From IMG/VR virus record IMGVR_UViG_3300035070_002626, positions 124,001 to 188,000 of that record: a stretch of DNA of 64,000 nt; one strand, 5' to 3'. The notes beneath the pieces were generated by a model. The model did no database searches and had not been told where the DNA came from. It saw only the letters and a list, made by a program, of their open reading frames with translations. The position numbers and the translations under genes are program-made. Numbering within the stretch: the first letter of the stretch is position 1; every line of letters begins with the position of its first letter. Shown here in pieces: positions 9,681 through 38,679 of the stretch.

Positions 9681-11720
9681 TTACTTTGTCTGTGCTATGA
9701 AAACGCCATTCCAGTCTGAAGGAAGGTCTTGTGTTTTCATATACTCGCATCTTTCAATCCACATGTCGTAATATTTTTCCATTTGATGATCAAAGTGGTC
9801 ATGTAACAAGCGACATTTATCAATAGCATCATCGAATCTCTGCGCACGATAATCTTCGTGCATTTGTATGTGTTTCTTCTGCGCATTACGCCATGCCGGG
9901 GCAGTATTGTCGAGAACTGTGTAGATAGTTAATCCAACTGATTTACCTTTTACTTGTAAATCATCTACTTTAAGATAGAAGAAGTCATCCTTTGTTGCTG
10001 CGTATGTTGTTTCGCCTACAAGTAACAGGCATCCGTATTCTTTACACTTGCTTTCTACTCTTGCTGCGGTGCTCACAGCGTCTCCAAGGACATCATATGA
10101 ATGACGTTTAGTACTTCCCATCTCACCAAGGTATCCCAACCCCGTGTTGATGCCAGCGCCCATACCAACAGCAGGACGGCCATCAGGTATAATAACTTCT
10201 TCATTAAACTTCTCCACTGCACGAAGCATGTCTAAGCCACACTGTACGGCGGTCTTAGCATGTTTAGCGTCATCTATAGGCGCATTATGTATGTGCATAC
10301 TAGCATCGCCGATGTATTTAATTATCATTCCGTCCGCATCAAGCACAGGTTGTGTAATGCTGTCCATGTAGCCGTTCATAATAGTTGTCAGACCTTTTAC
10401 ATCATCACCAAAACTTTCACCCAATGGAGTAAAGCCACGCAAGTCACTAAACACAATAGAGACTTCTTTCTTTTGCCCGTCTTTAATTAGACTTGGATTT
10501 TCTTGTAGCAGTTTAACCACTGTAGGCGATGCGTATCCAGCAAACTGTTTCTTGATTGCTTGTTTCTCTAAAAACTCTTGTACAAACTTAATGCCATATA
10601 CTTGCAATGCTATTATAATAAACACTATAACAGGTGCTGTAACGTCTAAAAGAAACTTATCAGTTGCGTATGCGTATATGCTGTAAGGTATAACTCCGAC
10701 TATCATTGTAACAGTTGTAGCAAGCCCAACCCACATCCAACGACTTAATAATATAAGCAATAATCCGCCTACTACTAGTGCAACAAGCTCTGCTGTTGGT
10801 GCCCAATTGGGACGTTGTATGTTTGTACCAGCAAACATAGTGCCTAGTACTGCGGCTTGTGTAGTGCCTGCATACTGCGCTCCCAGTGCCGTGGGAACAG
10901 GGTTAGCAATGCCTGCGGCAGTAACGTCTACAATAACTACTGCACCTCCTAGATCATTAGGTAAGTCTGCAACACTTACATTCTTGCTACGTTGACTCCA
11001 ATCAATCCACACTCTACCCTCGCTGTCTGTAGGAATAACACCAAACTTTGGTATGCGCATTTTTTCTATACCAAACTGATTTAGTTTAATTTGAAAGTTG
11101 GGATCACCTGCAATGACTCGTAATGTCTCGAGCGCCAAGCTTGGATATAATGTGCCGTTTACAACAGCAACAGTTGGCATACGACGAACCACACCATCTA
11201 TCTCTGGTTCAGTGCTTACAATACCTGCACCCACTGAATTGTTTTCAAGTTCTGATATATTAGCAATAATACCACCATATGGCAAGATACGATCTAAGTA
11301 CTGAGGTTGGATAATTGCTGCGCCCGGATTAATTGGTTCGTTTACAGTTTTGTTACTAGGACGGCTAGCAAGTATAACCGGATAGTCTAACATAGTATCA
11401 GCTAGGTATGCATCTCCACCTAGTCTATCCTCTTCAGGCATCATTACATTCCACACAACCAATCCAGCACCTCTGTCGTACAAGTCTACAATAATGTCTG
11501 CGTATATGTCTCGGGGGAAAGGATACTGTCCGTACAGTTCTAGTGCTGCTTCGTCTATCTCTGCAACATAGATATTATTCTCTACTGCTGGTTGATTTAC
11601 AATAAGCTGATCAAAATAATTTAATTTAATACTTTGTATAAAGTTATTAGGTACTGCAAATGCATACACTAATGCAGCCAGTGTAATCAATGCCCACCAA
11701 GGAGATAATAATCGTTTCAT
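9681..11720 (-). CDS. CHASE2-domain class III adenylate cyclase
   Basis: N-terminal TM; CHASE2 (EIDE..L..YGQYPFPR, DGVVRR, PSLAL); 3 TMs; cyclase motifs FSDLRGFT, KYIGDA, GINTG, YDVLGDAVSTAARVES, VKGK. Confidence 0.95.
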   Translation of the reverse strand: MKRLLSPWWALITLAALVYAFAVPNNFIQSIKLNYFDQLIVNQPAVENNIYVAEIDEAALELYGQYPFPRDIYADIIVDLYDRGAGLVVWNVMMPEEDRLGGDAYLADTMLDYPVILASRPSNKTVNEPINPGAAIIQPQYLDRILPYGGIIANISELENNSVGAGIVSTEPEIDGVVRRMPTVAVVNGTLYPSLALETLRVIAGDPNFQIKLNQFGIEKMRIPKFGVIPTDSEGRVWIDWSQRSKNVSVADLPNDLGGAVVIVDVTAAGIANPVPTALGAQYAGTTQAAVLGTMFAGTNIQRPNWAPTAELVALVVGGLLLILLSRWMWVGLATTVTMIVGVIPYSIYAYATDKFLLDVTAPVIVFIIIALQVYGIKFVQEFLEKQAIKKQFAGYASPTVVKLLQENPSLIKDGQKKEVSIVFSDLRGFTPLGESFGDDVKGLTTIMNGYMDSITQPVLDADGMIIKYIGDASMHIHNAPIDDAKHAKTAVQCGLDMLRAVEKFNEEVIIPDGRPAVGMGAGINTGLGYLGEMGSTKRHSYDVLGDAVSTAARVESKCKEYGCLLLVGETTYAATKDDFFYLKVDDLQVKGKSVGLTIYTVLDNTAPAWRNAQKKHIQMHEDYRAQRFDDAIDKCRLLHDHFDHQMEKYYDMWIERCEYMKTQDLPSDWNGVFIAQTK

Positions 11721-12086: not shown

Positions 12087-13268
12087 TTAGTATTGCGATA
12101 CACTCATGCTGCATCCGCCTGGATTAACACATGTACTTGTTATTGAGTATGACTTTGCTGTACCACTGTATTGTTCTAAACTAAAGTTGTATGCTGGTCC
12201 GTTCACACTAGATAAATTTACAGTTGCACTGTGTCCGCCACTGCCATGTTGTAGTATATCAACCAAGTTACTGTCGCCTGTTAAGTCAAGGTCAAGGCTT
12301 ACAGTGTCACTGTTTCCTAGTTGCGCTGCTTCAACATTGTTATAGTCTCCGTCTACGTCAACATTCATTGTATGAGCACCGTTTTTACGTTGTGACAATT
12401 CTACATCATTATAGTCACCTTCAATGCTTGTGGTCATTTCATGTGATGCCCAACAACAGTTCTCGGCTTGGTCAGTTTGTGCTGAATGGTATGTGTTATT
12501 GTTGCCGGTAATAGTTACATATGCGTCGTGGTCACCGGCTTCTGTTGTATCAGTATAACCATCTAATTGTTTACCTTGCCATACTTTTATATTGTTGTCA
12601 TCACCGATTAATATTAGTCTACTGAAGTTGCTTTCGCCGTTGCCACCTTGATAACTATCCACTGTGTTGTCATTGCCCGTGATTGCTGCTTCTGTTTGTT
12701 CGTATTGTGATCCATTTTGTGTTACTGTGACTGTATTCCTGTCGCCAGTGATGGGTGTATCATTGTAGCCATACACCATATGATTATTACCGTCTTGATC
12801 TACAGTTATAGAGTTGCCATCACCGTCTGCTTTGACGTATGCTAGGTTGTTATCACCGTCTTGTGTAATGGTTGCAGTTTGATCAGTATCACCACCATCT
12901 CCTAGTCCTGCGTAGGCTAAATTAGAGTCGCCAGTTTGTGTAATATCAATTCTGCAGTTGCTACCATAACAATGTGAATACGCTTCGTTATCATCGCCTG
13001 TTTGTGTTGTGTTGTTTATTCCATTATCTGCGCTCATGTACACACCTATTAGATTGATATCTCCTGTTTGAGTGTATGTAGTGCTTGCATTGTTGCCACT
13101 AATAGTCGCTTTGCCATTGGTAGGCCATCCATCACTAACAACATTGTCAGTGCCATCTTGTGTAATAGTTAAGTCAGTGTTGTTGCCAACTTGGTTGATA
13201 TAGATTTCATTTGCATAACAGATTTGGCTAAAAAAACAAGTTATTATTGTTGCAATTATTAATTTCAT
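12087..13268 (-). CDS. Long curlin-repeat protein (CsgA/CsgB-like)
   Basis: Signal peptide, then about 15 repeats of N-x-A/x-x-I-x-Q-x-G-x-x-N. Confidence 0.88.
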   Translation of the reverse strand: MKLIIATIITCFFSQICYANEIYINQVGNNTDLTITQDGTDNVVSDGWPTNGKATISGNNASTTYTQTGDINLIGVYMSADNGINNTTQTGDDNEAYSHCYGSNCRIDITQTGDSNLAYAGLGDGGDTDQTATITQDGDNNLAYVKADGDGNSITVDQDGNNHMVYGYNDTPITGDRNTVTVTQNGSQYEQTEAAITGNDNTVDSYQGGNGESNFSRLILIGDDNNIKVWQGKQLDGYTDTTEAGDHDAYVTITGNNNTYHSAQTDQAENCCWASHEMTTSIEGDYNDVELSQRKNGAHTMNVDVDGDYNNVEAAQLGNSDTVSLDLDLTGDSNLVDILQHGSGGHSATVNLSSVNGPAYNFSLEQYSGTAKSYSITSTCVNPGGCSMSVSQY

Positions 13269-14395
13269 TATTGCCTCTGATTTATATCTATAGTGTTGTT
13301 ACCAGCACCTAATAGGTAATCATATACCACTTCGTCACCTTGTTGAATATTAATACGATACCCATATTCTTGCGATAACGTCAATCTCAAATAATTATTT
13401 ACATCTACACTGGTTCTTTGTACAACCCAATCATCATTTCCTATTTGTAGCGAGATTCGTGTTGTTTCGTCGTATCCGCCGAGCTGTTGTTCAAAAAACT
13501 GCGAGTTTTGTGTTTTAAGTTCGTCTCTAAACAATGCTGCAAGAGCTAAATTTAATTGATCTATCATGTCGACTAGTAGTTCACCTAAGTAATAGTCCAC
13601 ATTATGATCTAAATCTGTTATCCAAATATCTTTAATGCTTTCTACTAACACATCTTCGTCGAGTTCATCAAACTCTAGTGCATCGATGTCAAGAAACTCA
13701 AACATTTTTCGTGTACGTTTGCGTATTTGATCTTCTTCATCTGCTATAACTGTTCGCTTGCGTAGTATTAACAAGTTGTTGATTTGGTCTTCGTTTACAC
13801 TAATAATTACCGGCTTGCTTGGAAGTTTTCCACTGTGTGAAACTTGTGTTGCTTGAAATGCTTGATTCATTACAACAAAACCTTCGTCTGTTTCTACTTT
13901 GATTTCGCCTGTTACACAATAACCTGCACTATCACAGCTAGGCAATAGAGTAACCATTGAGCCACCAATTTCATCTACAACCATAATAAAGTCTGTACCA
14001 CGCACAGAGATAGTTGCACTTGGTGTGCGCACTCTTACGTTTTGTCTTGAGTTTTTAGCAATTTGTCCACTGGCATAACGAACAGTTCCTAAGGCAGCTC
14101 GCATGTCCAAACTGCCTTTGCCTGTGTTAGGGTCGTATACAAAGTCGTCAATTACTAGTATACTATTGTCAATAACATCTACTCTGGTATCGTCAATAAA
14201 ATCTAAACGCATTTTACCACGTTTGGTTCTGGCAGTATCCATTGATTCCAGCAGAGTGCCTTTTTCGCTGCCGACTACATTGCTCTCACGCACAATTTCG
14301 CCAGACCCATCAAGTTCAGTCACTGTGCCAATACTAGCACTCGTTTGCGAGACTGTAACTAAGAGGCTGATAATTGCAAAAGCGAATATTTTCAT
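13268..14395 (-). CDS. FecR-domain periplasmic protein
   Basis: Signal peptide; IGTVTELDG, IDDFVYDP, VRTPSATISVRGTDF, GEIKV motifs. Confidence 0.9.
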   Translation of the reverse strand: MKIFAFAIISLLVTVSQTSASIGTVTELDGSGEIVRESNVVGSEKGTLLESMDTARTKRGKMRLDFIDDTRVDVIDNSILVIDDFVYDPNTGKGSLDMRAALGTVRYASGQIAKNSRQNVRVRTPSATISVRGTDFIMVVDEIGGSMVTLLPSCDSAGYCVTGEIKVETDEGFVVMNQAFQATQVSHSGKLPSKPVIISVNEDQINNLLILRKRTVIADEEDQIRKRTRKMFEFLDIDALEFDELDEDVLVESIKDIWITDLDHNVDYYLGELLVDMIDQLNLALAALFRDELKTQNSQFFEQQLGGYDETTRISLQIGNDDWVVQRTSVDVNNYLRLTLSQEYGYRINIQQGDEVVYDYLLGAGNNTIDINQRQ

Positions 14396-14396
14396 A

Positions 14397-15116
14397 TTAA
14401 TCGCTTTGCGTTATATCTACGTCTTGACTGTCGCCGTTAAATGTTGCATCAATTGTGCTACCGTCCACACCACTTTGTGTGATGTTGTACGTGCTGCCGC
14501 CTCCGGTGATGTTCAAATTAACAGTATGCCCATCCAAGCTTGCACCGCCGCTGGTATTGATAGTAATTGCATTGCCTTCGTCGCTAGCAGCACTTGTAGT
14601 TGCCAATGACGATGAATTATCTGCGACTATCGAAATTCTACTGTCAACCCCGTTTACTGTTAAGTTAGTAATATTGTTATCACCGTCCATATCAAAAGTA
14701 ATAATGCCGCCGCTTGCGTCTGCTGATTCACCAATATTAAATGTATATGTGTTATCGTCGCCGTCACCATCAATATCTAATTTTACAGTTTCACAGTTAC
14801 CTGCACCTGCTGTTCCTAAACTAGCACAATTTAGTGTTACATCATTCGAGTCTCCAAAAAAGTCCCAAGTACCTGTGTAATTTGCTCCGTTGATTATAGC
14901 ATCAATGGTGTTAGTGTTACCTGTTTGGGTAATACTAAACGTCATATCGTCGCCGTTGATTGTAAAATTGGTCGCCTGTTGGCCAATTTCGTTGTCAGTG
15001 CCATCTTGTACCAAGTCTAGATCTAAGTTATCCCCAACTTGGGTAATGTAAATATCATTTGCCAGTGAGGTACTGGATATAAACAACAAAGATAATACAT
15101 ATAAAAGTTTTTTCAT
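14397..15116 (-). CDS. Curlin-repeat protein (CsgB/CsgA-like)
   Basis: Signal peptide (SLA-N), NDIYITQVG, repeated I-x-Q-x-G-x-x-N strands. Confidence 0.85.
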   Translation of the reverse strand: MKKLLYVLSLLFISSTSLANDIYITQVGDNLDLDLVQDGTDNEIGQQATNFTINGDDMTFSITQTGNTNTIDAIINGANYTGTWDFFGDSNDVTLNCASLGTAGAGNCETVKLDIDGDGDDNTYTFNIGESADASGGIITFDMDGDNNITNLTVNGVDSRISIVADNSSSLATTSAASDEGNAITINTSGGASLDGHTVNLNITGGGSTYNITQSGVDGSTIDATFNGDSQDVDITQSD

Positions 15117-15151
15117 GTTCTGTTTGCTCCTAAGGCTTTACGCCTTTATTT

Positions 15152-15967
15152 TTATTTTTTAAATTTCCACATATTGCGCTTCTTACCCTCGAAAACCATT
15201 TCAATCACACCTTGCTCTATTGCTGCTCTTACTGCATAGTTAACTGGCTCATTAACACTATAACCAGTTTCGGCTTCTACAAGTTTTGTTCCTAAGTCGA
15301 AAAACTTAAAAATATCTGCACCCGATCTATAGCTTGCAATAGTCTTCTCAGTTGCTATGCTCATTAATACTTTACCAGTGCTAACGCTAACTAAACGCAT
15401 TACAACAGTTACAGTGTCTACTCTGTATTCTGTTTGCACACCGATACCTAAGTATCTTGCTCCTGCGCCTCCTACTGCTGTGTTGCTGTCATACCCAACA
15501 ATTCCCCCTTCAAGTATAAGCCCTGCAAACAACATTGGCTTCAACGGTGTAGGGCCGTTTGGAAGTTCTTTTTCGTACACTTCCCTCGTACTACGAATAA
15601 GTTGACGTTCTTTAATCAAATTATCCATACCTACACGCTCTACCACTTCAAACCAAACGCCATTACCTACATCTTGGAGTGCTTTAATAACCCATACTTC
15701 TGATCCTTGGGTTACTGCGCTCGACAAGTTGGCGATATTATCCGCCGGCTTACGCTGTCCTGTTGCATCTCTGAAACCGTAAACAGCGATTGTAATCTTT
15801 GGTCCATCTATTGCGGGGACCGCCGCAAGCCTATCTTCAATTGGACTAACTTGTACTATAGGAGATGTTTTACTATCTTCTAGAACTTGAAGGCTTTTGT
15901 TAGTTGCGCAGCCTTGTAATATTAGTACACTAAATCCAATTAGTAAAAACGTTTTTATCAGTTTCAT
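15152..15967 (-). CDS. csgG: Curli secretion channel CsgG
   Basis: Lipobox LQGC; AVYGFRDATGQRKP, SSAVTQG, WFEVVER, LIKERQLIR, EGGIVGYDSN, GARYLGIG, NEPVNYAVRAAIE. Confidence 0.96.
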   Translation of the reverse strand: MKLIKTFLLIGFSVLILQGCATNKSLQVLEDSKTSPIVQVSPIEDRLAAVPAIDGPKITIAVYGFRDATGQRKPADNIANLSSAVTQGSEVWVIKALQDVGNGVWFEVVERVGMDNLIKERQLIRSTREVYEKELPNGPTPLKPMLFAGLILEGGIVGYDSNTAVGGAGARYLGIGVQTEYRVDTVTVVMRLVSVSTGKVLMSIATEKTIASYRSGADIFKFFDLGTKLVEAETGYSVNEPVNYAVRAAIEQGVIEMVFEGKKRNMWKFKK

Positions 15968-16425
15968 TAGAAGTTAAACTCCCCGCCGCCGGGTATGCTA
16001 ATTTCTGTAGTTGTACCATCGTCGTCGACAATTGTTAACGTGATAGTTCCTGTTGTTGCGTCTTTAACCCAGGTTATATTTGCTCCTTCAATATCTGCTG
16101 TGCCTGTATTTGCACATGAGTCTCCGCAATTAGCAAACATAGCGTCTACCATTTGCTTACTTAGGTTAGCGTAGATTCTTGATTCCACGTTTCTAAGAAA
16201 CTTGTTTAGTGTTGTATTTTCAAGCTCGCGCTCTAAACGTGATGCCTCTGCCTCTGCCTTCTTTCGCAAGTCTTCACTGCGATTATGTTGTAACTGTTCT
16301 ACACTTAATACATGCGTAGAATATCCGTTTCCAAAATGAAACGCTGGAGATTTAAACCCCCAAACAAGATCAGCATTTGCTGACCCTGCAATTAACAGTA
16401 ATAAAACAGTGTATAAATTTTTCAT
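15967..16425 (-). CDS. csgF: Curli assembly protein CsgF
   Basis: Signal peptide, DLVWGFKSPAF..GNG N-terminus, C-terminal ITLTIVD..GTTTEISIP; directly upstream of csgG. Confidence 0.88.
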   Translation of the reverse strand: MKNLYTVLLLLIAGSANADLVWGFKSPAFHFGNGYSTHVLSVEQLQHNRSEDLRKKAEAEASRLERELENTTLNKFLRNVESRIYANLSKQMVDAMFANCGDSCANTGTADIEGANITWVKDATTGTITLTIVDDDGTTTEISIPGGGEFNF

Positions 16426-16442
16426 GGTCACCCTCTTATATG

Positions 16443-16450
16443 TATTTATA
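16443..16450 (-). promoter_or_regulatory. T4-type late promoter for the csg operon
   Basis: Exact TATAAATA just upstream of csgF. Confidence 0.6.
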
Positions 16451-16499
16451 GGACCATTTAAAATCTTTAACTGTGTTACTAATTTATTTATTATGCCTA

Positions 16500-16517
16500 G
16501 TGTAAATATTTTTACAC
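16500..16517. promoter_or_regulatory. Palindromic operator between csgF and the Fis-like gene
   Basis: GTGTAAA-TATT-TTTACAC (TGT-N10-ACA). Confidence 0.55.
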
Positions 16518-16541
16518 CTATATAATAAAATAAATATTATT

Positions 16542-16769
16542 ATGACCGAGCAAGACGTATTTTTTAACACATTTGATGAGATGTGGACCGAGAAGGAAAT
16601 ACAACATGTTTATGCAGAAAATCTCAACGAACAGTTGGAAACTCTTGAACTAAATTGTATTGAAACTGCACTGCAAGCACACAACGGTAATCGCACAAAA
16701 GCGGCCCAGTTGTTAAACATAGGCCGCACTTGTCTGCTTGCTAAAATGAAAAAATATAATCTAGTCTAA
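16542..16769 (+). CDS. Fis-family helix-turn-helix protein (stand-alone HTH_8)
   Basis: LETLELNCIETALQAHNGNRTKAAQLLNIGRTCLLAKMKKY. Confidence 0.9.
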   Translation: MTEQDVFFNTFDEMWTEKEIQHVYAENLNEQLETLELNCIETALQAHNGNRTKAAQLLNIGRTCLLAKMKKYNLV

Positions 16770-17288
16770 ATGTTTCATTAATTCGTCAATGTTAACTGGT
16801 GTATAGTCAGTATGTTCTACGCACACACACCTATATGGCCCTTCCGGGCTTGGATTACTATGAATATGCCCGTGTATATTAAGTATAGACTGTTTGCTAA
16901 ATCTACTCTTTTGGGCTATTGTATCAGGATGCTGCGAAGTGTGCGATAGTAACAACTTAGGAAAGTTTACTTCCCACATCATAATATGTTCAAAATACGG
17001 TAAAAGAGTTTTAGGGTTGTCTCGATTGCCAATGACTAGACGTTTCTTTCCAGGTAACTTAGCAAAGTTAGCAGCTAGCCATTCAGACTGATTTTCGCCG
17101 CACACTACATCTCCCAGGTGGTATACAATGTCGTCGACTTTGACAGTATCGGCCCAGTTGTCCAACATTGCTTCGTTCATCTGCTTTACTGAATCAAAAG
17201 ACCTTATCAACGAACCAGAGGCATCAAAAAATCCTAGAAGAGGTTCGTCGTTAAAATGTGTATCACTGATTACCCATGTATCGGACAT
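16761..17288 (-). CDS. Calcineurin-like metallophosphoesterase
   Basis: SDTHF, HLGD, GNRD (canonical GNHD), SH, HGHIH. Confidence 0.88.
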   Translation of the reverse strand: MSDTWVISDTHFNDEPLLGFFDASGSLIRSFDSVKQMNEAMLDNWADTVKVDDIVYHLGDVVCGENQSEWLAANFAKLPGKKRLVIGNRDNPKTLLPYFEHIMMWEVNFPKLLLSHTSQHPDTIAQKSRFSKQSILNIHGHIHSNPSPEGPYRCVCVEHTDYTPVNIDELMKHLD

Positions 17289-17307
17289 ATAGCTTACTTT
17301 TCTAATT

Positions 17308-17391
17308 TGGTACTCGCACCCGGACTCGAACCGGGACGCCCTACGGCCACAGATTTTAAGTCTGTTATGTCTACCATTCCATCATGCGAGC
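17308..17391 (-). tRNA. tRNA-Leu (TAA)
   Basis: GCTCGCA/TGCGAGT acceptor stem, ACAGA-CTTAAAA-TCTGT anticodon arm, long variable arm, GGTTCGAGTCC, encoded CCA. Confidence 0.95.
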
Positions 17392-17393
17392 GT

Positions 17394-17470
17394 TGGTGCT
17401 CCCGGTAGGACTCGAACCTACGACCGACCCGTTATGAGCGGGGCGCTCTAACCAACTGAGCTACAGGAGC
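17394..17470 (-). tRNA. tRNA with CAT anticodon, probably tRNA-Ile2 (lysidine) rather than Met
   Basis: GCTCCTG..TAGCTCAGTTGGTTAGAGC..CCCG-CTCATAA-CGGG..GGTTCGAGTCC..ACCA; lacks the initiator C1:A72 mismatch and GGG:CCC anticodon stem. Confidence 0.9.
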
Positions 17471-17481
17471 GGTAATGTTTT

Positions 17482-17616
17482 TTATCGATAATCTTTGATG
17501 TTGTAGGCGTCTTTATATGCACGATCCATATCTTTGCCTCCATGATTATAACCAACAATATAACCGATAATAACACCGCAGATTGCAATGCACAATGAGA
17601 TCATAATAACTTCCAT
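17482..17616 (-). CDS. Small membrane protein (44 aa)
   Basis: Manual translation MEVIMISLCIAICGVIIGYIVGYNHGG...; GGAGG RBS. Confidence 0.65.
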   Translation of the reverse strand: MEVIMISLCIAICGVIIGYIVGYNHGGKDMDRAYKDAYNIKDYR

Positions 17617-17619
17617 GGC

Positions 17620-17886
17620 TTAAGCCTCCATTCCGTCAAACATTTCGTATTCACGTTCACTTGCTGCTTCTTCGCTGCGTTGAGCAATCATGTTTCCTAC
17701 GATTTCGTCAAACGCTTCGTAAAACAATTCTTCGCTTGCAAAATCGCCACGGCATGCAGTGTACGCATCAGCATCAACAAAGTTCCAATTGATGCTGTAA
17801 TCTTCATTGAGATTTTCGGCACGATCTGCTACAGCTTCGACTACATTACGGAGTGTGATATAATTTTGCATGTTGTACACTTTCAT
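17620..17886 (-). CDS. Acidic hypothetical early protein
   Basis: ORF directly behind a sigma70 promoter. Confidence 0.75.
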   Translation of the reverse strand: MKVYNMQNYITLRNVVEAVADRAENLNEDYSINWNFVDADAYTACRGDFASEELFYEAFDEIVGNMIAQRSEEAASEREYEMFDGMEA

Positions 17887-17905
17887 TGTTGCTTTCTATA
17901 CATAC

Positions 17906-17934
17906 TTTATAGCATATACAAATATAATTGTCAA
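17906..17934 (-). promoter_or_regulatory. Sigma70-type promoter driving the small ORFs and tRNAs
   Basis: TTGACA-N17-TATAAA. Confidence 0.7.
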
Positions 17935-17957
17935 CCGGAATATGTGTTTTATTCAAT

Positions 17958-18089
17958 TTATTTTTTTGTAAGTTCTACAAATCTATCTGCAATTTCACGC
18001 ATTTGTTTTGCATTCAAGTTTGCTGTACCCATCGATTCTACAGTACGAGCAATATCGTGTAATTTAATTGCAATTTCGCTGTCCGTCAT
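17958..18089 (-). CDS. Small hypothetical protein (43 aa)
   Basis: Manual translation MTDSEIAIKLHDIARTVESMG...LTKK; abuts the upstream gene. Confidence 0.6.
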   Translation of the reverse strand: MTDSEIAIKLHDIARTVESMGTANLNAKQMREIADRFVELTKK

Positions 18090-19554: not shown

Positions 19555-19860
19555 TTAACTTTCGGGCTCGATTTTAACTTGCAACGGATATCCATTAGCA
19601 CGGGCAAGTAGAGTAACTTCAATTCCTTTTTGTTCAGCCATTTCGTACGGCATAACTGCTACCACAGCTGATCCCGTTTCGTGCACGTTGAGTGTTAAAT
19701 TTTCCGCAGTTGCTTCGGTATAATTGAAAATATCAACTAGTGTGTGGATAACAAACTCATGTGAAGTTTGGTTGTCGTTAATGTAGATCAACTTAAACAA
19801 CGTTGGTTCTTTAAGAAAAATGTTTGTTTGCACTTTATTTTTTGTTTCGGTTTGGCTCAT
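19555..19860 (-). CDS. clpS: ATP-dependent Clp protease adaptor ClpS
   Basis: EP..FKLIYIND..T..EFV..L..IF, VHETGSAVV, AEQK, GYPLQVKIE. Confidence 0.92.
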   Translation of the reverse strand: MSQTETKNKVQTNIFLKEPTLFKLIYINDNQTSHEFVIHTLVDIFNYTEATAENLTLNVHETGSAVVAVMPYEMAEQKGIEVTLLARANGYPLQVKIEPES

Positions 19861-19937
19861 AACAATCCTTATTCTTTTATAGTGTATGCAGAGCAATAGC
19901 CACTCTGCATACTATTTTTATATACTTATCTTAGGAG

Positions 19938-20381
19938 TTAGGTTTCAACTGTTATGTCGATAACTTTTGGCTTCATTACTTCTGGAATAAGTCGCTCAAG
20001 GTCAATCTTGAGAATTCCATCTTTCAATGTTGCTGCTTTAACTTCTACGTAGTCTGCTAAGTTGAATGTGCGTACAAAAGGTCTAGTACTAATGCCCTTG
20101 TGCAGGAATTCACACTCATCGTCAGAATCTGTTTTTCCTGTAACTGTTAGTACCCCTTCTTTCAGCTCAACATTGATGTCCGCCATTTGAAAACCAGCTA
20201 CTGCCAGTCTGATGCGATAAGTTTCTTCTCCTGTGCGAAGAATATCATATGGGGGATAATTTTGCACAGCACCATTGGCTGTTGCTCTGTCAATGTTGTT
20301 AGTGATACGATCAAAAAGTTGATCAAATCCAACTGCGTTGCGATAAAATGGGGTGAGGTCTAGTGAGGTAAGTCTTGTCAT
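19938..20381 (-). CDS. Small heat shock protein Hsp20 (IbpA-like)
   Basis: VGFDQLFD, NYPPYDI, LAVAGF, FLHKGIS.R.F.R.F.L, GILKIDL, PE..KP..I. Confidence 0.95.
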   Translation of the reverse strand: MTRLTSLDLTPFYRNAVGFDQLFDRITNNIDRATANGAVQNYPPYDILRTGEETYRIRLAVAGFQMADINVELKEGVLTVTGKTDSDDECEFLHKGISTRPFVRTFNLADYVEVKAATLKDGILKIDLERLIPEVMKPKVIDITVET

Positions 20382-20484: not shown

Positions 20485-22872
20485 TTACCATTTAATGCTA
20501 TATGATACTTCGGCTACGTTATTGCCTGTTTGGCTCATTGCTGCACCTAGTGTTATGTCGCCATTGTTGTATGCAGTAGTGTATTCAATTCTAGCATATG
20601 CATTTATATCTGATGGCATACCAAATTGTTGCTGTGTGTACTGTGTTGTTCCGTTGCTGTCAATACTAGTAGGAATACTTGTGCTAACGTTACCGCTGAG
20701 TGCAACTGGGTGTATACCTGCAAACGCTTGTAACCCACCGTCAGTATAGCTTGCTTCGGCCCACACTCCTGTTTGTGTCGAAACATTTGTAACCAATCCA
20801 GGTGTGATGTCTGTGCTCACATGCATTACGCTACCTGTGAATGCAAACTTGTCTTTAGCATAACTTGCAACGTTGTCGATAACTGTGCTACTCTTAACAT
20901 CGCCCCAAACCCCATTAAAATCTAACCAAGGATTGTTTTTCATATTTGTTGCATAGACACTGTAATCAAAGTTACCTACACTATACATACTATGCCCAAG
21001 TGATATTTCATTGGAATCAAGATTGAATCTAATTGTTGTATCGCTGTTTCCAAACGATACACTGCCATTATTTTGTAATGTGTTGTACATTGTGGTATTA
21101 CTGTTTACTGTAGATTGACTTAGATCAACTGTATAGCCTCGACCAATGGTGTCAGTTGCTACGCCGGATACTTCGCCAATGTTTAGTCCAGTGATGTTGC
21201 CACTTAGTGACGATCCGTTTAGTGACAATCCTCCCAATGGATTAAATGCCGATTTGATGTCGATGATATTGCCGCCTGCATATGTTGTGCCACTGGCTAT
21301 TAGTGCTTGTGTTGCATCGGCATCACTTAAATAATTCCACTCATCTTGCAACATGCTTTTAGCTGTGCCTGCTGCAATGGTTGATCCATCTATTTGGCTC
21401 ATAAACACAGCCATTTGTCTATCTGATCCGTTCATAAATGGTATGTATGTTACAAGATAATCATTACCATCGTCGCCTTTAAACACATTAACTGTGTTAC
21501 CACTACTGTTAGCACTACCACCATATGTATTTGTTGAATCAGTGATAAAATTTGTTAATGTGTTCTGATGTGCAGCAACATATTTGTTGTCTGATGTTTT
21601 AATCAAGAACTGATGGCTGTCATTAGCTCCACCAAAGTCTCCGCCAGACACTAGAATATCTTCTTTTCCGTCGCCATTAATATCGAAAAATTTGGGCTGG
21701 TATGTACTGTGACTGTTAGTGTTATATCCACTTAGAATGCTACTCGTAACATCGCTAAAGTCCCCAGTGCCGTTGTTTTGTAAAAACTGTATGTCACTAA
21801 ATTCTCGGAACACATCTGATGAACGAGCAAACACCATAACATCGTCGATGTTATCTTCGTTGAAATCGTAGTTAACTACACGCACCTGGTGATCAGTTCC
21901 AGTTACATTTGAACTTGCTGGCAAGTCTTTAACAAATGTGTATTCTACAACAGCTTCACCCTCTCGCGCATCCCAACCTTGCGGATTAGTAAAATCTACA
22001 CTGTACATCTTGGTTAAATTAGCACTGCTACATCCAGCTACGTTAAGATACGACAATGGGCAAGAAGCATCAGTTATAATGATTTCGTTGTTGCCGCCAT
22101 CTCCTAAGAAATTACCAATAGTTACACCTGAACCACCACTGCGAAGATGTCCGCTGTTATTCCATGGATCTATATATGTAGTAAACCCATCAATTGTATT
22201 GTTAAGAGCAATTGTTGTGTTTGGTCCATAATCTGTCATGATAATATCATCGTATGTGTCGTTGTTCAAGTCGCCGACATCACTATCATGTGACCATATA
22301 CCTACAGTGGGAATTGAAATTTTGGCAAAATTACTACCGTCATTACGAAATACATTTGCTGGACCATACACAACATTGTTATCGGTGCTGTGGCTTACAA
22401 ACATGTCATTTCGGCCTGTCTTAAAAAAGTCTGTAAACTCAATATCAGGCTCAGTGCCTAAGATTATATTATCATCACCGGAAAACCATTGAGATGTTTT
22501 ATCAACCAAACTGCCGTTTTCAAAACTCATTATGTTTATTCGACTGCTCACCCAATTGTTATAATCATTTGTTGCTGTCTGTCTACCAGCAAACACAATA
22601 TCGTCACTAGCTCCGTCTCCATCCAAATCGCTGATGTAGGAGTCGTATACAGAATATACACTAGTAGCACCGCCTGCTAGTGGATCAATGGTTCCTTGGT
22701 ATGTTGGAAGAGCATACAACCAAGCAATTGGACTAGGCGAAGGACTGCCCGGATTACTAGGAGTTGCCCCTGCTTGTGTTGCAGGCTGTCCGCCTCCACC
22801 TCCACCACCACATGCACTAAGAGCAGTGGTTGCTAGCAGGGCTGCTACAAGTTTAGGTCTTGCGTGTTGCAT
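20485..22872 (-). CDS. Lipoprotein with FG-GAP/VCBS repeats and a probable C-terminal beta-barrel (autotransporter-like)
   Basis: Lipobox LSAC followed by poly-G; DLDGDG..DIV, GDLNND..DII, DFNED..DVM, DINGDG.EDILV repeats; ends VSYSIKW. Confidence 0.75.
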   Translation of the reverse strand: MQHARPKLVAALLATTALSACGGGGGGGQPATQAGATPSNPGSPSPSPIAWLYALPTYQGTIDPLAGGATSVYSVYDSYISDLDGDGASDDIVFAGRQTATNDYNNWVSSRINIMSFENGSLVDKTSQWFSGDDNIILGTEPDIEFTDFFKTGRNDMFVSHSTDNNVVYGPANVFRNDGSNFAKISIPTVGIWSHDSDVGDLNNDTYDDIIMTDYGPNTTIALNNTIDGFTTYIDPWNNSGHLRSGGSGVTIGNFLGDGGNNEIIITDASCPLSYLNVAGCSSANLTKMYSVDFTNPQGWDAREGEAVVEYTFVKDLPASSNVTGTDHQVRVVNYDFNEDNIDDVMVFARSSDVFREFSDIQFLQNNGTGDFSDVTSSILSGYNTNSHSTYQPKFFDINGDGKEDILVSGGDFGGANDSHQFLIKTSDNKYVAAHQNTLTNFITDSTNTYGGSANSSGNTVNVFKGDDGNDYLVTYIPFMNGSDRQMAVFMSQIDGSTIAAGTAKSMLQDEWNYLSDADATQALIASGTTYAGGNIIDIKSAFNPLGGLSLNGSSLSGNITGLNIGEVSGVATDTIGRGYTVDLSQSTVNSNTTMYNTLQNNGSVSFGNSDTTIRFNLDSNEISLGHSMYSVGNFDYSVYATNMKNNPWLDFNGVWGDVKSSTVIDNVASYAKDKFAFTGSVMHVSTDITPGLVTNVSTQTGVWAEASYTDGGLQAFAGIHPVALSGNVSTSIPTSIDSNGTTQYTQQQFGMPSDINAYARIEYTTAYNNGDITLGAAMSQTGNNVAEVSYSIKW

Positions 22873-22940: not shown

Positions 22941-24152
22941 TTAGGCTGCTATTTTTTGTGGATTGTTTACTAACTCGGGTGTAATTTCAACTTGAGTTAT
23001 TTTACTGTTAGCATACTCTTTAAGACTGTACATATGCGGCATTAGAATTCTTTCCAATTCAGCTTGCAAACTACGTGCACCTGTTTTGCGTTTATGTGCA
23101 TGTTGTGCAATCTCACGCAATGCATCTACACTAAATGTTAATGCAACACCATCAGTTTCAAACAAGTATGTGTATTGTGCTACTAAACTGTTGCGTATCT
23201 CTGTGAGTACATATACTAGCTGATCTTCGGTTAATTGCTCAAGAGCTACATTGGTCGGAAAACGTCCTACAAATTCCGGAATTAATCCAAATTTTACCAG
23301 ATCGTCGGGCTCAATATCTCCTAGGCTACCAGGTGTGTTGTCTTTGATTGTAACACCAAAGCCGATACCCGAGTCAGACGATGCTCTACGTTTTACTACA
23401 TCTTCGAGTCCAACAAACGCTCCGCCTGCAATAAACAATATATTTTTAGTGTCTATTTCGATCATTTCCGCTTGTGGGTTTTTCCTACCGACATTGCCAG
23501 CTGGTACACGACAAATTGTGCCTTCTACTAGTTTAAGCAATGCTTGCTGCACACCTTCGCCACTAACATCGCGAGTGATCGACGAACTTTCACTTTTACG
23601 TGATATCTTGTCAACTTCGTCTAAAAACACAATACCTCTTTGTGCTTTTTCAACATCCCCGTCTGCTGAGTTTAGCAACTTACCGATTAATGTTTCGACA
23701 TCGTCCCCAACATACCCAGCTTCGGTAATAGAAGTTGCATCCGCAATTGCAAATGGCACATCTAAAAATCGTGCTACACTTTTTGCTAACAATGTCTTAC
23801 CGCAGCCCGTTGGCCCAAGCAATAGTATATTGGCTTTGTCTAATTCTATCTCTGTTGATGTATTATTAATTCTTTTGTAATGATTAGCAACTGCTACCGA
23901 AAGCACAACTTTTGCCATTTCTTGACCAATCACGTATTTGTCAAGGAATTCTTTTAGCTCGACAGGGTCTATGTCATTGACATTATTTGCATGTACTGTA
24001 TTACTTGCTAGCTCTTGTAGTAAGTCTCCACATAGATCCACACATTCATTGCAGATAGCAACATTGTCGCCAACTATGAGCTTTGTTACACTGTTTTTAT
24101 CCTTATTACAAAAATTACATTTTTCGTATGCTAACATGGTATCCTCGGTCAT
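22941..24152 (-). CDS. clpX: ATP-dependent Clp protease ATP-binding subunit ClpX
   Basis: CNFC...CNEC zinc finger, GPTGCGKT, AGYVG, FLDEVDK, RDVSGEGVQQALLK, IGF loop, TGARSL. Confidence 0.96.
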   Translation of the reverse strand: MTEDTMLAYEKCNFCNKDKNSVTKLIVGDNVAICNECVDLCGDLLQELASNTVHANNVNDIDPVELKEFLDKYVIGQEMAKVVLSVAVANHYKRINNTSTEIELDKANILLLGPTGCGKTLLAKSVARFLDVPFAIADATSITEAGYVGDDVETLIGKLLNSADGDVEKAQRGIVFLDEVDKISRKSESSSITRDVSGEGVQQALLKLVEGTICRVPAGNVGRKNPQAEMIEIDTKNILFIAGGAFVGLEDVVKRRASSDSGIGFGVTIKDNTPGSLGDIEPDDLVKFGLIPEFVGRFPTNVALEQLTEDQLVYVLTEIRNSLVAQYTYLFETDGVALTFSVDALREIAQHAHKRKTGARSLQAELERILMPHMYSLKEYANSKITQVEITPELVNNPQKIAA

Positions 24153-38198: not shown

Positions 38199-38679
38199 TA
38201 TCAAATCCTTTTTGCTGACAGTATTTAGCAATGTTTATATATTTATCAATGTATTTCTGTAATATGTGATAACGATTCTTAGTATCATCTAACCTGTCAA
38301 TTGTGATATTTCTTTGTGTTTCGGTGATTTTACTACTGTTGATAAAACAGCGATAGTGCATCATTTCGCTTTGACGTCTAACTAATTCGTTTTCATGTTT
38401 AATTAATTGCTGCGCATCTGTTAATTTGCAATTTTTATCGTAAATGCACCAGGCAAGTGCAATTCTACTCGAGCTCACTGTTGTGATCAATTGGTTCTTT
38501 TTATAAATGTTGTATGAATGATTTTCTGTTTTAACAATTTGATAGTACTTGAATGCAGAAATACTATCACCACTTCTGGTAATAGCATTGTTGTTTTCTA
38601 ATAAATTTTCTTTTAAAATATCTGTTAATTTATTAACAGCTTTAGTTATGTACCGATGACGTATGTTATCAATAACCAT
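38185..38679 (-). CDS. Hypothetical protein
   Basis: ORF in a tightly packed operon; start uncertain. Confidence 0.6.
   Translation of the reverse strand: MVIDNIRHRYITKAVNKLTDILKENLLENNNAITRSGDSISAFKYYQIVKTENHSYNIYKKNQLITTVSSSRIALAWCIYDKNCKLTDAQQLIKHENELVRRQSEMMHYRCFINSSKITETQRNITIDRLDDTKNRYHILQKYIDKYINIAKYCQQKGFDNETI

What the first reader, a model, noticed from the sequence alone, without database searches (positions are those of the whole stretch)
16432..16769. Palindromic TGT-N10-ACA operator between the curli operon and a stand-alone Fis-type HTH gene
Seen: GTGTAAA-TATT-TTTACAC at 16500-16517 lies between divergent TAAATA-type promoters. Established: TGT-N10-ACA is the geometry bound by the Fis-type HTH of NifA and also matches CRP-family spacing (TGTGA-N6-TCACA; GTA-N8-TAC). 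Inference: either the adjacent Fis-like protein controls the locus, or host cAMP-CRP closes a feedback loop with the phage cyclase.
Basis: partly seen in the sequence, partly recalled or inferred. Interest (0 to 1): 0.6.

Follow-up and report, generated by a model that had tools for sequence, protein, structure and literature searches.

The report
Phage regulator's operator beside curli genes
A small palindrome between a marine giant phage's curli genes and a tiny Fis-type DNA-binding gene is conserved and travels with that gene in related phages, so it is very probably the protein's own binding site for controlling the neighbouring surface-fibre genes.

Summary
The palindrome GTGTAAA-TATT-TTTACAC is at 16500-16517 as described. 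Alone it is near chance: TGT-N10-ACA occurs 200 times in the 300-kb T4-like phage genome against about 183 expected.

Comparison with related phages shows it is functional. In 44 related viral contigs with csgF, all 9 that carry the small Fis-type (HTH_8) gene keep the palindrome beside it. None of the 35 without the gene has it upstream of csgF. Across 21 clusters of the protein (70% identity), 20 keep it within 200 nt upstream of the gene. It follows the gene into three neighbourhoods, always facing a secreted-protein gene: csgF, a CsgB-like curlin, or a Ser/Thr/Asn-rich protein.

It lies between T4-type late promoter boxes (NATAAATA), 0-9 nt from a curli-directed box. The one clade lacking the palindrome also lacks that box.

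Best reading: it is the operator of a dimeric stand-alone Fis/NtrC-type protein that controls the operator-proximal divergent late promoter and probably its own gene. Repression is more likely than activation. Binding is inferred, not shown.

The host cAMP-CRP reading is not supported. The phage curli cluster is already published; the regulator-operator pair appears not to be.

The parts
16500..16517 (.). 18-bp dyad operator GTGTAAA-N4-TTTACAC, with core TGT-N10-ACA at 16501-16516
   Evidence: It is conserved in 28 distinct upstream regions and 16 distinct 18-mers. It holds 11 of the 24 invariant columns in an unanchored MAFFT alignment of nine intergenic regions.
16542..16769 (+). Gene for a 75-aa stand-alone Fis/NtrC-type HTH_8 DNA-binding protein, the proposed regulator
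   Evidence: Pfam HTH_8 E 9e-14. AlphaFold2 pLDDT 88, five helices. Best structural matches are E. coli Fis and the NtrC4 DNA-binding domain. A family profile hits FleQ, Fis, ZraR and NtrC in the PDB. It is the only HTH_8 gene in the genome.
16529..16536 (+). Late-type promoter box AATAAATA for the Fis-type gene, 5 nt before its ATG (implies a leaderless or near-leaderless mRNA)
   Evidence: A TAAATA box lies 4-5 nt before the ATG in 16 of the 18 relatives that have a plus-strand box; the others are at 8 and 26 nt.
16485..16492 (-). P2: operator-proximal late-type box AATAAATA pointing toward csgF, 7 nt from the operator edge
   Evidence: In relatives a box lies 0 or 6-9 nt from the operator in 26 of 27 regions. 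It is lost together with the operator in the one clade that lacks the operator.
16443..16450 (-). P1: late-type box TATAAATA, 17 nt upstream of the csgF ATG, followed by the ribosome-binding site GAGGGTG
   Evidence: An equivalent single box lies before csgF in Fis-less relatives.
15967..16425 (-). csgF; the ATG at 16425 is preferred over the GTG at 16431
   Evidence: Pfam CsgF E 1.6e-12. 44 viral homologues at 57-82% identity.
15152..15967 (-). csgG
   Evidence: Pfam CsgG E 1e-49.
14397..15116 (-). 239-aa secreted curlin-like protein. In class-B relatives it is the gene that faces the operator.
   Evidence: No Pfam hit. It is syntenic with the HTVC008M gene annotated as curlin minor subunit CsgB. 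Class-B arrangement.
13268..14395 (-). FecR-domain protein of the cluster
   Evidence: Pfam FecR E 2.6e-7; phrog_37870 E 2e-98.
12087..13268 (-). 393-aa curlin-repeat protein
   Evidence: Pfam Curlin_rpt E 2.5e-25, three stretches.
9681..11720 (-). CHASE2-adenylate/guanylate cyclase that closes the cluster
   Evidence: Pfam CHASE2 and Guanylate_cyc. It holds the same position in HTVC008M.

Best explanation
The palindrome is the cognate operator of the adjacent 75-aa stand-alone Fis/NtrC-type (HTH_8) protein. A symmetric dimer places one recognition helix on each GTGTAAA half-site across an A/T-only centre.

The site lies in the spacer between divergent T4-type late promoters, which are NATAAATA boxes read by the phage's gp55-type sigma factor. 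It sits 7 nt from the curli-directed box P2 and 11 nt from the regulator's own box.

Bound protein controls P2, the operator-proximal promoter of the divergent secreted-fibre operon (csgF-csgG-curlins-cyclase here), and probably feeds back on its own gene. The proximal promoter P1 stays unregulated.

The sign is not settled. Repression is favoured, because in some lineages the operator abuts or overlaps the box, and the operator-box distance does not keep helical phase.

Shown here: the sequence, its conservation, its co-inheritance with the gene, the protein fold, and the promoter-motif statistics. Inferred: binding, dimerisation, the promoter assignment of individual boxes, and the sign of regulation.
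For: (1) Co-occurrence. Of 44 csgF-bearing viral loci, 9 have the Fis-type gene and all 9 have TGTWAA-N4-TTWACA (up to 1 mismatch) next to it. The 35 without the gene have none within 400 nt upstream of csgF.

(2) Breadth. 20 of 21 clusters of the protein at 70% identity carry the site within 200 nt upstream. The background rate is 13 hits per 300 kb in the phage's own genome, and only this hit is intergenic.

(3) The site follows the gene, not csgF. It faces csgF in class A, a CsgB-like curlin in class B, and Ser/Thr/Asn-rich secreted proteins where no curli genes are near.

(4) Footprint. An unanchored MAFFT alignment of nine intergenic regions (45% mean identity) leaves three conserved blocks: P1, P2 and the palindrome. 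Window and L078 share 22 identical bases across the site while their proteins are about 43% identical.

(5) Symmetry. Pairs +/-4 to +/-7 are complementary in all 28 distinct sites. A-T becomes T-A on both arms at +/-5 in three of them.

(6) Protein. HTH_8. The model matches Fis and the DNA-bound NtrC4 domain at about 1 A rmsd over 50 residues. Invariant R62 aligns with Fis R85. It is the only HTH_8 gene in the genome, and the palindrome is the only intergenic operator-like site there.

(7) Promoter context. ATAAATA is strand-specifically enriched upstream of genes. The genome has a Gp23 capsid protein and a gp55-type late sigma, phrog_12791 at E 1e-74. NATAAATA is the late promoter of marine T4-like phages (PMC2984593).

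(8) Coupling to P2. The operator-to-P2 gap is 0 or 6-9 nt in 26 of 27 regions. The one clade without the operator has only one box.
Against: No binding or expression data exist. The sites are phylogenetically related, so the counts overstate independence. The anchored logo is partly ascertained by the search pattern.

Metatranscriptome contigs cover the palindrome contiguously with csgF in three of the four runs laid (X15-X17), so it could be transcribed. Contigs cannot show starts or strand, and DNA may be present in those libraries.

I found no covariation between recognition-helix residues and operator variants (against 31). One clade of the protein has no operator, so the protein must have another site or role there. 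gp33 and gp45 homologues were not found in the 86%-complete record, so the T4 late-activation model may not transfer fully.
Confidence: 0.72

Rival explanations
1. RNA or single-strand DNA hairpin: the inverted repeat acts as a stem-loop in a transcript (a stability, processing or translation element) and not as a protein-binding duplex site.
For: The stretch folds as a 7-8-bp hairpin of about -7 kcal/mol, z about -3 against shuffles, on both strands. Metatranscriptome contigs span it. In class-B relatives a plus-strand TATAAATA box lies 12 nt upstream, so the site could be transcribed there. There is one both-sides change at +/-5 and G-T combinations at +/-8.
Against: The half-site sequence itself is near invariant, not just the pairing: +/-4, +/-6 and +/-7 each have a single pair type in 28 of 28. 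Pair +/-9 is broken in 13 of 28 and +/-3 in 3 of 28. The stem is weak and A/U-rich, with no T-run for termination. In class A it lies upstream of both flanking boxes. This model does not explain strict co-inheritance with a DNA-binding protein gene.
Confidence: 0.07
2. Back-to-back host sigma-70 -35 elements: each arm reads TTTACA (5 of 6 of TTGACA) on its own strand, so the palindrome is simply two divergent early-promoter -35 hexamers.
For: The promoter scan finds TTTACA-18 nt-TATTAT at 16511-16540 with 10 of 12 matches.
Against: Promoter-like hits in the region are at shuffle level, 5 against 4.6. That promoter would start transcription downstream of the ATG at 16542. The distance from the arm to downstream boxes varies widely, 6-54 nt. 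On the csgF side no -10 lies at 16-18 nt. Conservation extends to the outer G/C beyond the hexamer, and the arm-to-arm spacing is fixed. Fis-less csgF loci lack it. A dual role is not excluded.
Confidence: 0.07
3. Architectural or recombination site: the protein binds the palindrome for a non-transcriptional purpose, for example as a Fis-like accessory site involved in moving the regulator cassette between genomic positions.
For: The gene plus site occupies three different neighbourhoods. Fis proper serves recombination and excision complexes (PDB titles).
Against: There is only one site per locus, with no second repeat bounding the cassette. The site is always tightly apposed to a promoter box and is lost together with it. 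The Fis N-terminal beta-hairpin arms used for invertase activation are absent from the model.
Confidence: 0.05
4. Host CRP/FNR-family site that couples curli expression to cAMP made by the phage CHASE2-cyclase.
For: TGT-N10-ACA is contained in the CRP consensus. A cyclase closes the cluster.
Against: The site has 2 mismatches at the G/C of each half-site, and that base is never G in 28 distinct operators. The site is absent upstream of csgF in all 35 Fis-less loci, including ones that carry the cyclase. It is present next to the Fis-type gene where there are no curli genes within the 3 kb fetched on each side.
Confidence: 0.02
5. Chance palindrome in A/T-rich spacer DNA.
For: Genome-wide frequencies of such shapes are near expectation. 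Sixteen inverted repeats of at least 7 nt occur in 221 nt around it.
Against: Conservation and co-inheritance across 20 of 21 protein clusters.
Confidence: 0.01

Closest known systems
NifA/NtrC-type upstream activator sequences bound by the C-terminal HTH_8 domain of bacterial enhancer-binding proteins (NifA UAS TGT-N10-ACA; own knowledge)
   Same: The DNA-binding fold is the same: HTH_8, about 1 A rmsd to the DNA-bound NtrC4 domain. The site has the same dyad geometry, TGT-N10-ACA.
   Different: The protein is only the DNA-binding domain, 75 aa, with no AAA+ or receiver domain. No sigma-54 promoter core is nearby. The site is 0-9 nt from a gp55-type box, not about 100 bp upstream. The specified half-site is longer (GTGTAAA).
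E. coli Fis (nucleoid-associated protein)
   Same: It is the best structural match. It is a small stand-alone HTH_8 protein. The invariant Arg aligns with Fis R85. The operator centre is A/T-only, as in good Fis sites (own knowledge).
   Different: The model has no N-terminal beta-hairpin arms. There is one well-defined 18-bp site per genome instead of many degenerate 15-bp sites. The conserved G and C are 13 steps apart, against 14 in the Fis core (own knowledge). The family was found only on phage-type contigs.
FleQ of Pseudomonas (HTH_8 regulator of biofilm-matrix genes)
   Same: It is the top PDB sequence match of the family profile, E 6e-10. From my own knowledge, FleQ binds palindromic boxes at non-sigma-54 promoters of matrix genes and can repress or activate.
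   Different: FleQ is 490 aa with receiver-like and AAA+ domains and responds to c-di-GMP. The phage protein has no sensor domain.
csgD-csgBAC divergent regulatory region of enterobacterial curli (own knowledge)
   Same: A regulator gene is transcribed divergently from curli genes, with the control region between them.
   Different: CsgD is a LuxR-type response regulator, and that intergenic region is about 0.5 kb with many host inputs. Here the regulator is HTH_8, the spacer is about 115 bp, and the promoters are phage late-type.
Curli (type VIII secretion) cluster of pelagimyophages and Melnitz-like phages (PMC7029224, PMC9004378; HTVC008M NC_020484)
   Same: The gene order is the same: csgF-csgG-curlin-like-two further genes-cyclase.
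   Different: HTVC008M has no Fis-type gene or operator upstream of csgF. Word searches of the two papers for 'Fis', 'regulator' and 'helix-turn-helix' found no regulator of the cluster, and PMC7029224 reports that late-promoter prediction failed in pelagimyophages.

Membership tests
HTH_8 (Fis/NtrC-type) DNA-binding domain | Pfam PF02954 match above the gathering score | tested here: met
   51.3 bits against 22, E 9.4e-14, residues 32-72; found again in the genome scan.
HTH_8 (Fis/NtrC-type) DNA-binding domain | Helical fold with a long helix followed by a C-terminal helix-turn-helix, superposable on Fis/NtrC domains | tested here: met
   AlphaFold2 pLDDT 88 with helices 3-14, 17-24, 28-46, 51-57 and 62-71. 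Foldseek probability 1.0 to Fis (TM 0.62) and NtrC4 DBD (rmsd 0.9-1.0 A over 50 residues), though Foldseek E-values are only about 1e-2.
HTH_8 (Fis/NtrC-type) DNA-binding domain | Obligate homodimer that binds a dyad-symmetric site | not testable with these tools
   The dyad symmetry of the conserved site is indirect support only. It needs SEC-MALS, crosslinking or a protein-DNA structure.
Fis proper (nucleoid-associated Fis) | N-terminal beta-hairpin arms and a length of about 98 aa | tested here: not met
   The protein is 75 aa and the model is all-helical with no strands.
Fis proper (nucleoid-associated Fis) | Many degenerate sites genome-wide | tested here: not met
   There is one intergenic operator-like site in 300 kb at up to 1 mismatch.
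NifA-type enhancer system | TGT-N10-ACA site | tested here: met
   16501-16516. TGT and ACA are kept in 23 of 28 distinct operators; the other five read ACG.
NifA-type enhancer system | AAA+ sigma-54 interaction domain in the binding protein | tested here: not met
   Only HTH_8 (plus a weak HTH_50 hit) in 75 aa.
NifA-type enhancer system | Sigma-54 promoter (GG-N10-GC) downstream of the site | tested here: not met
   None on either strand in 16380-16560.
CRP-family binding site | TGTGA-N6-TCACA, with G/C at the fourth base of each half-site | tested here: not met
   The window site has 2 mismatches, both at that base. The base is A (25) or T (3) in 28 distinct operators.
CRP-family binding site | The site is kept with the regulated gene, independent of any phage regulator | tested here: not met
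   Absent upstream of csgF in 35 Fis-less loci.
T4-type late promoter (for the flanking boxes) | TATAAATA/NATAAATA box, strand-specific, upstream of genes | tested here: met
   Of 55 ATAAATA, 38 lie within 60 nt upstream of a same-strand start and 37 lie in the 6.6% intergenic DNA. Motif identity follows PMC2984593.
T4-type late promoter (for the flanking boxes) | gp55-type late sigma factor encoded by the phage | tested here: met
   L135:1447-2361(-), phrog_12791 at E 1e-74.
T4-type late promoter (for the flanking boxes) | gp33 co-activator and gp45 sliding clamp | tested here: inconclusive
   No tblastn hit with the HTVC008M genes and no PF09116 hit. The record is 86% complete and its capsid protein is only 33% identical to that of HTVC008M.
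T4-type late promoter (for the flanking boxes) | Transcription starts about 6 nt downstream of each box | not testable with these tools
   Only assembled metatranscriptome contigs were available, and they cannot show starts.

The most novel reading that the evidence does not exclude
The Fis-type dimer bound about 21-38 bp upstream of the start of a gp55-type late promoter is a site-specific activator. It would stand where T4 places the gp33/gp45 sliding-clamp co-activator and so switch on the secreted-fibre operon independently of replication. That would be the first sequence-specific activator of a T4-type late promoter. gp33 and gp45 homologues were not detected in this genome.
Probability: 0.15. 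Interest if true: 0.75.

Novelty: new variant of a known kind. Interest (0 to 1): 0.5.

Why it matters
Curli (CsgGF) clusters in abundant marine T4-like phages have been published since 2020, and their function and control were left open (PMC7029224, PMC9004378). This analysis adds three concrete handles.

1. A phage-restricted family of stand-alone Fis/NtrC-type DNA-binding proteins.
2. Its conserved 18-bp operator.
3. A promoter map (P1, P2 and the regulator's own box) built on NATAAATA late boxes, in a phage group where late-promoter prediction was reported to fail.

Together these make the regulation of the phage fibre genes directly testable. They link the curli cluster to a second class of Ser/Thr/Asn-rich secreted proteins placed under the same regulator. 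They would also be a rare case of a sequence-specific protein acting next to a gp55-type late promoter.

Tried and rejected
- Homodimer prediction of the 75-aa protein (complex prediction) gave 'no answer'. It is not evidence for or against.
- Four metatranscriptome runs laid on 14000-18000 yielded only assembled contigs of a strain about 96-97% identical. They cover the region, including the palindrome, but cannot show starts, strand or level, so the question whether the palindrome is transcribed stays open.
- A search for further operator copies, which would indicate a regulon, found 13 hits at up to 1 mismatch in 300 kb. All but the window site lie in coding sequence by a crude gene call. 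I found no sign of a regulon.
- I looked for covariation between recognition-helix residues and operator variants (GTGTAAA against GTGTTAA). None was evident (against 31).
- The sigma-70 promoter and intrinsic-terminator scan was at shuffle level. No terminator overlaps the palindrome.
- gp33 and gp45 were not found.
- Pfam scans of the divergent secreted proteins in curli-less relatives found no family.
- In the prokaryote genome collection, only two stand-alone homologues appeared, both on phage-like MAG contigs. The other 22 hits are C-termini of long proteins; the 18 whose open frame was resolved are 443-1051 aa.
- The big representative-protein search was not used, because the family and word searches had settled the protein.

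Full report
**1. The observation**

Bases 16500-16517 read GTGTAAA-TATT-TTTACAC, a perfect 7+4+7 inverted repeat that contains TGT-N10-ACA at 16501-16516. It is the only match at up to 1 mismatch in the window and in the whole 299,910-bp virus record that holds the window (G000:C1:124001-188000, 86% complete).

- CsgF at 15967-16425(-)
- CsgG at 15152-15967(-)
- a FecR-domain protein at 13268-14395(-)
- a Curlin_rpt protein at 12087-13268(-)
- a CHASE2-cyclase at 9681-11720(-)
- a 75-aa HTH_8 (Fis family) protein at 16542-16769(+)

As a shape, the palindrome is not beyond chance. The genome has 47 perfect 7-4-7 palindromes against 31 +/- 5 simulated. It has 336 with spacers of 0-8, and 200 TGT-N10-ACA against 183 +/- 12. 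The surrounding 221 nt of A/T-rich DNA holds 16 inverted repeats.

**2. What phage this is, and what the TAAATA boxes are**

The record encodes a Gp23-family major capsid protein. It also encodes a 304-aa gp55-type late sigma factor: phrog_12791 at E 1e-74, and a tblastn hit to the HTVC008M late sigma. It is therefore a large, distant T4-like phage.

The same curli-to-cyclase gene order is annotated in Pelagibacter phage HTVC008M and described for pelagimyophages and Melnitz-like phages (PMC7029224, PMC9004378).

ATAAATA occurs 55 times in the genome. Of these, 37 lie in the 6.6% that is intergenic and 38 lie within 60 nt upstream of a same-strand start. The opposite orientation gives 2. This matches the NATAAATA late promoter of marine T4-like phages (PMC2984593).

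Three boxes lie in the intergenic region:
- P1, TATAAATA at 16443-16450(-), 17 nt before the csgF ATG
- P2, AATAAATA at 16485-16492(-), 7 nt from the palindrome
- the regulator's own box, AATAAATA at 16529-16536(+), 11 nt from the palindrome and 5 nt before the ATG

**3. Conservation and co-inheritance**

A CsgF search returned 44 related viral contigs at 57-82% identity. Nine of them carry a small Fis-type gene. All nine have the palindrome (TGTWAA-N4-TTWACA, up to 1 mismatch) beside it. The 35 without the gene have no such site within 400 nt upstream of csgF.

A search with an alignment of the Fis-type proteins returned 59 more viral loci. Forty-six regions, the window's included (28 distinct 90-mers, 16 distinct 18-mers), keep the palindrome 24-97 nt before the ATG.

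Clustered at 70% protein identity, 20 of 21 clusters carry it. The background rate is 13 hits per 300 kb, about 0.01 expected per 200-nt upstream region.

An unanchored MAFFT alignment of nine class-A intergenic regions (mean identity 45%) leaves three conserved blocks: P1, P2 and the palindrome. The palindrome holds 11 of the 24 invariant columns.

The site follows the regulator gene, not csgF:
- Class A (the window): it faces csgF.
- Class B: the gene sits between csgG and a CsgB-like curlin, and the site faces that curlin.
- Several lineages, including an independent one fetched through P0013: no curli genes lie within the 3 kb fetched on each side. The site faces a signal-peptide-bearing Ser/Thr/Asn-rich protein with no Pfam family.

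Pairs +/-4 to +/-7 are complementary in all 28 distinct sites. At +/-5, A-T becomes T-A on both arms in three of them.

**4. The protein**

The family has a conserved N-terminal EQDALW-like motif and a C-terminal GN(R/Q)TKAA-x3-(I/L)GR-x2-L-x-AKMKKY helix-turn-helix.

The AlphaFold2 model (pLDDT 88) is five helices. Its best matches are E. coli Fis and the NtrC4 DNA-binding domain bound to DNA, at about 1 A rmsd over 50 residues. The family profile hits FleQ, Fis, ZraR and NtrC in the PDB. Invariant R62 aligns with Fis R85.

No PHROG family fits beyond weak hits. In one genome per prokaryote species, the only stand-alone homologues sit on two phage-like MAG contigs. The other 22 hits are C-termini of long proteins; the 18 whose open frame was resolved are 443-1051 aa. 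It is the only HTH_8 gene in the genome.

**5. Mechanism**

The most economical reading is a dimeric regulator on its own operator between divergent late promoters.

The operator is tightly coupled to P2. The gap to the minus-strand TAAATA hexamer is 6-9 nt in class A and in the curli-less lineages. It is 0 nt in class B and in the L087-type clade. This holds in 26 of 27 regions. The one clade without the operator has only a single box before csgF, so P2 and the operator are lost together. Fis-less relatives also have only one box, or csgF follows an upstream same-strand gene with no box in between.

The distance to the regulator's own box varies from 6 to 54 nt. That box stays 4-5 nt from the ATG in 16 of the 18 regions that have one.

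With the box centred near -10, the operator covers about -21 to -38 in class A and overlaps the box edge in class B. In T4 this is where RNA polymerase and the upstream sliding clamp sit; the clamp extends the footprint by 13 bp (PMC2988020).

Because the gap changes by about 7-8 bp between classes (not a helical turn), and because in class B the site abuts the box, I favour repression of P2 with autoregulation. Activation is not excluded. Binding, dimerisation, promoter use and the sign of regulation are all inferences.

**6. Rivals**

- CRP. The critical G of TGTGA is never present, and the site is absent wherever the Fis-type gene is absent, including in loci that have the cyclase.
- NifA-like enhancer. 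The geometry fits, but there is no AAA+ domain and no sigma-54 core promoter.
- RNA hairpin. The fold is weak, about -7 kcal/mol. The sequence is conserved, not merely the pairing. Metatranscriptome contigs do span the site, so this is not excluded.
- Sigma-70 -35 hexamers. TTTACA lies on both strands, but distances to any -10 vary and the scan is at shuffle level.
- Chance. Refuted by section 3.

**7. Novelty**

The curli cluster is known. The regulator family, its operator and the promoter map appear not to be described. Word searches of the two curli-phage papers found no mention of such a regulator, and one of them reports failure to find late promoters. The logic (a divergent HTH regulator with a palindromic operator) is ordinary. 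A stand-alone, sequence-specific HTH_8 protein acting beside gp55-type late promoters in phages is a new variant.

**Scores:** interest 0.5; confidence in the operator reading 0.72.

Noticed in passing
window 16529-16544; genome-wide; relatives: TAAATA boxes sit 4-5 nt before an ATG unusually often: 15 cases genome-wide, and 16 of the 18 Fis-type genes that have a plus-strand box. If transcription starts about 6 nt after the box as in T4, these genes make leaderless or near-leaderless mRNAs with no ribosome-binding site.
   Followed up: partly
window 12087-13268(-) and 14397-15116(-): The cluster encodes a 393-aa protein with three Curlin_rpt matches (E 2.5e-25) and a 239-aa curlin-like secreted protein. 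The literature on pelagimyophage curli clusters states that csgA/csgB are missing (PMC7029224, PMC9004378). At least this phage carries a true curlin-repeat protein.
   Followed up: partly
L077:1958-2857(-), L085:1831-2796(-), L082:1665-2930(-), L066:1307-1870(-), L138:2005-2865(-): In relatives with no curli genes nearby, the regulator-operator pair faces a gene for a signal-peptide-bearing Ser/Thr/Asn-rich protein with no Pfam family. In four of the five lineages a second large secreted protein follows. This may be a second kind of phage surface fibre under the same regulator.
   Followed up: partly
L051, L052, L053, L054, L062, L109 (upstream of the Fis-type gene): One clade of the Fis-type protein has lost both the operator and the P2 box, and its gene has a normal ribosome-binding site instead of a box at the ATG. 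What the protein binds there is unknown.
   Followed up: partly
window 17308-17470(-): tRNA-Leu(TAA) and tRNA-Met(CAT) lie next to the metallophosphatase gene. Metatranscriptome contigs pile up here with summed depth of hundreds, but many run on into unrelated sequence, so most are probably other organisms' tRNAs.
   Followed up: no
window 19555-19896(-), 19938-20381(-), 22941-24152(-), 20485-22872(-): The phage encodes ClpS, Hsp20 and a ClpX-type ATPase with a zinc finger close together (Pfam), plus a 795-aa lipoprotein-like FG-GAP repeat protein. ClpS lies downstream of the Fis-type gene in many relatives.
   Followed up: no
window 16408-16422 against 16499-16513: A 15-nt direct repeat (87% identical) places an operator-like half-site (AGTGTATAAAT) inside the first codons of csgF. 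It could be an auxiliary half-site or chance. I did not check it in relatives.
   Followed up: no
window 38623-38638: A second perfect match to the relaxed core pattern (TGTTAA-TTTA-TTAACA) lies inside a coding region by a crude gene call. It is probably chance.
   Followed up: no
window 14000-18000: Near-identical sequence is held by 20 public sequencing runs from 17 studies. These are mostly marine and seawater metagenomes (one is labelled wastewater) and include salt-marsh and marine metatranscriptomes, so this phage lineage is widespread.
   Followed up: no
28 distinct operators, positions +/-10: The base pair just outside the 18-mer is G...C in 12 distinct sites and A...T in 12, so the symmetry may extend to 20 bp. 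The split follows the gene-arrangement classes, so it may reflect the abutting TAAATA box and not recognition.
   Followed up: no
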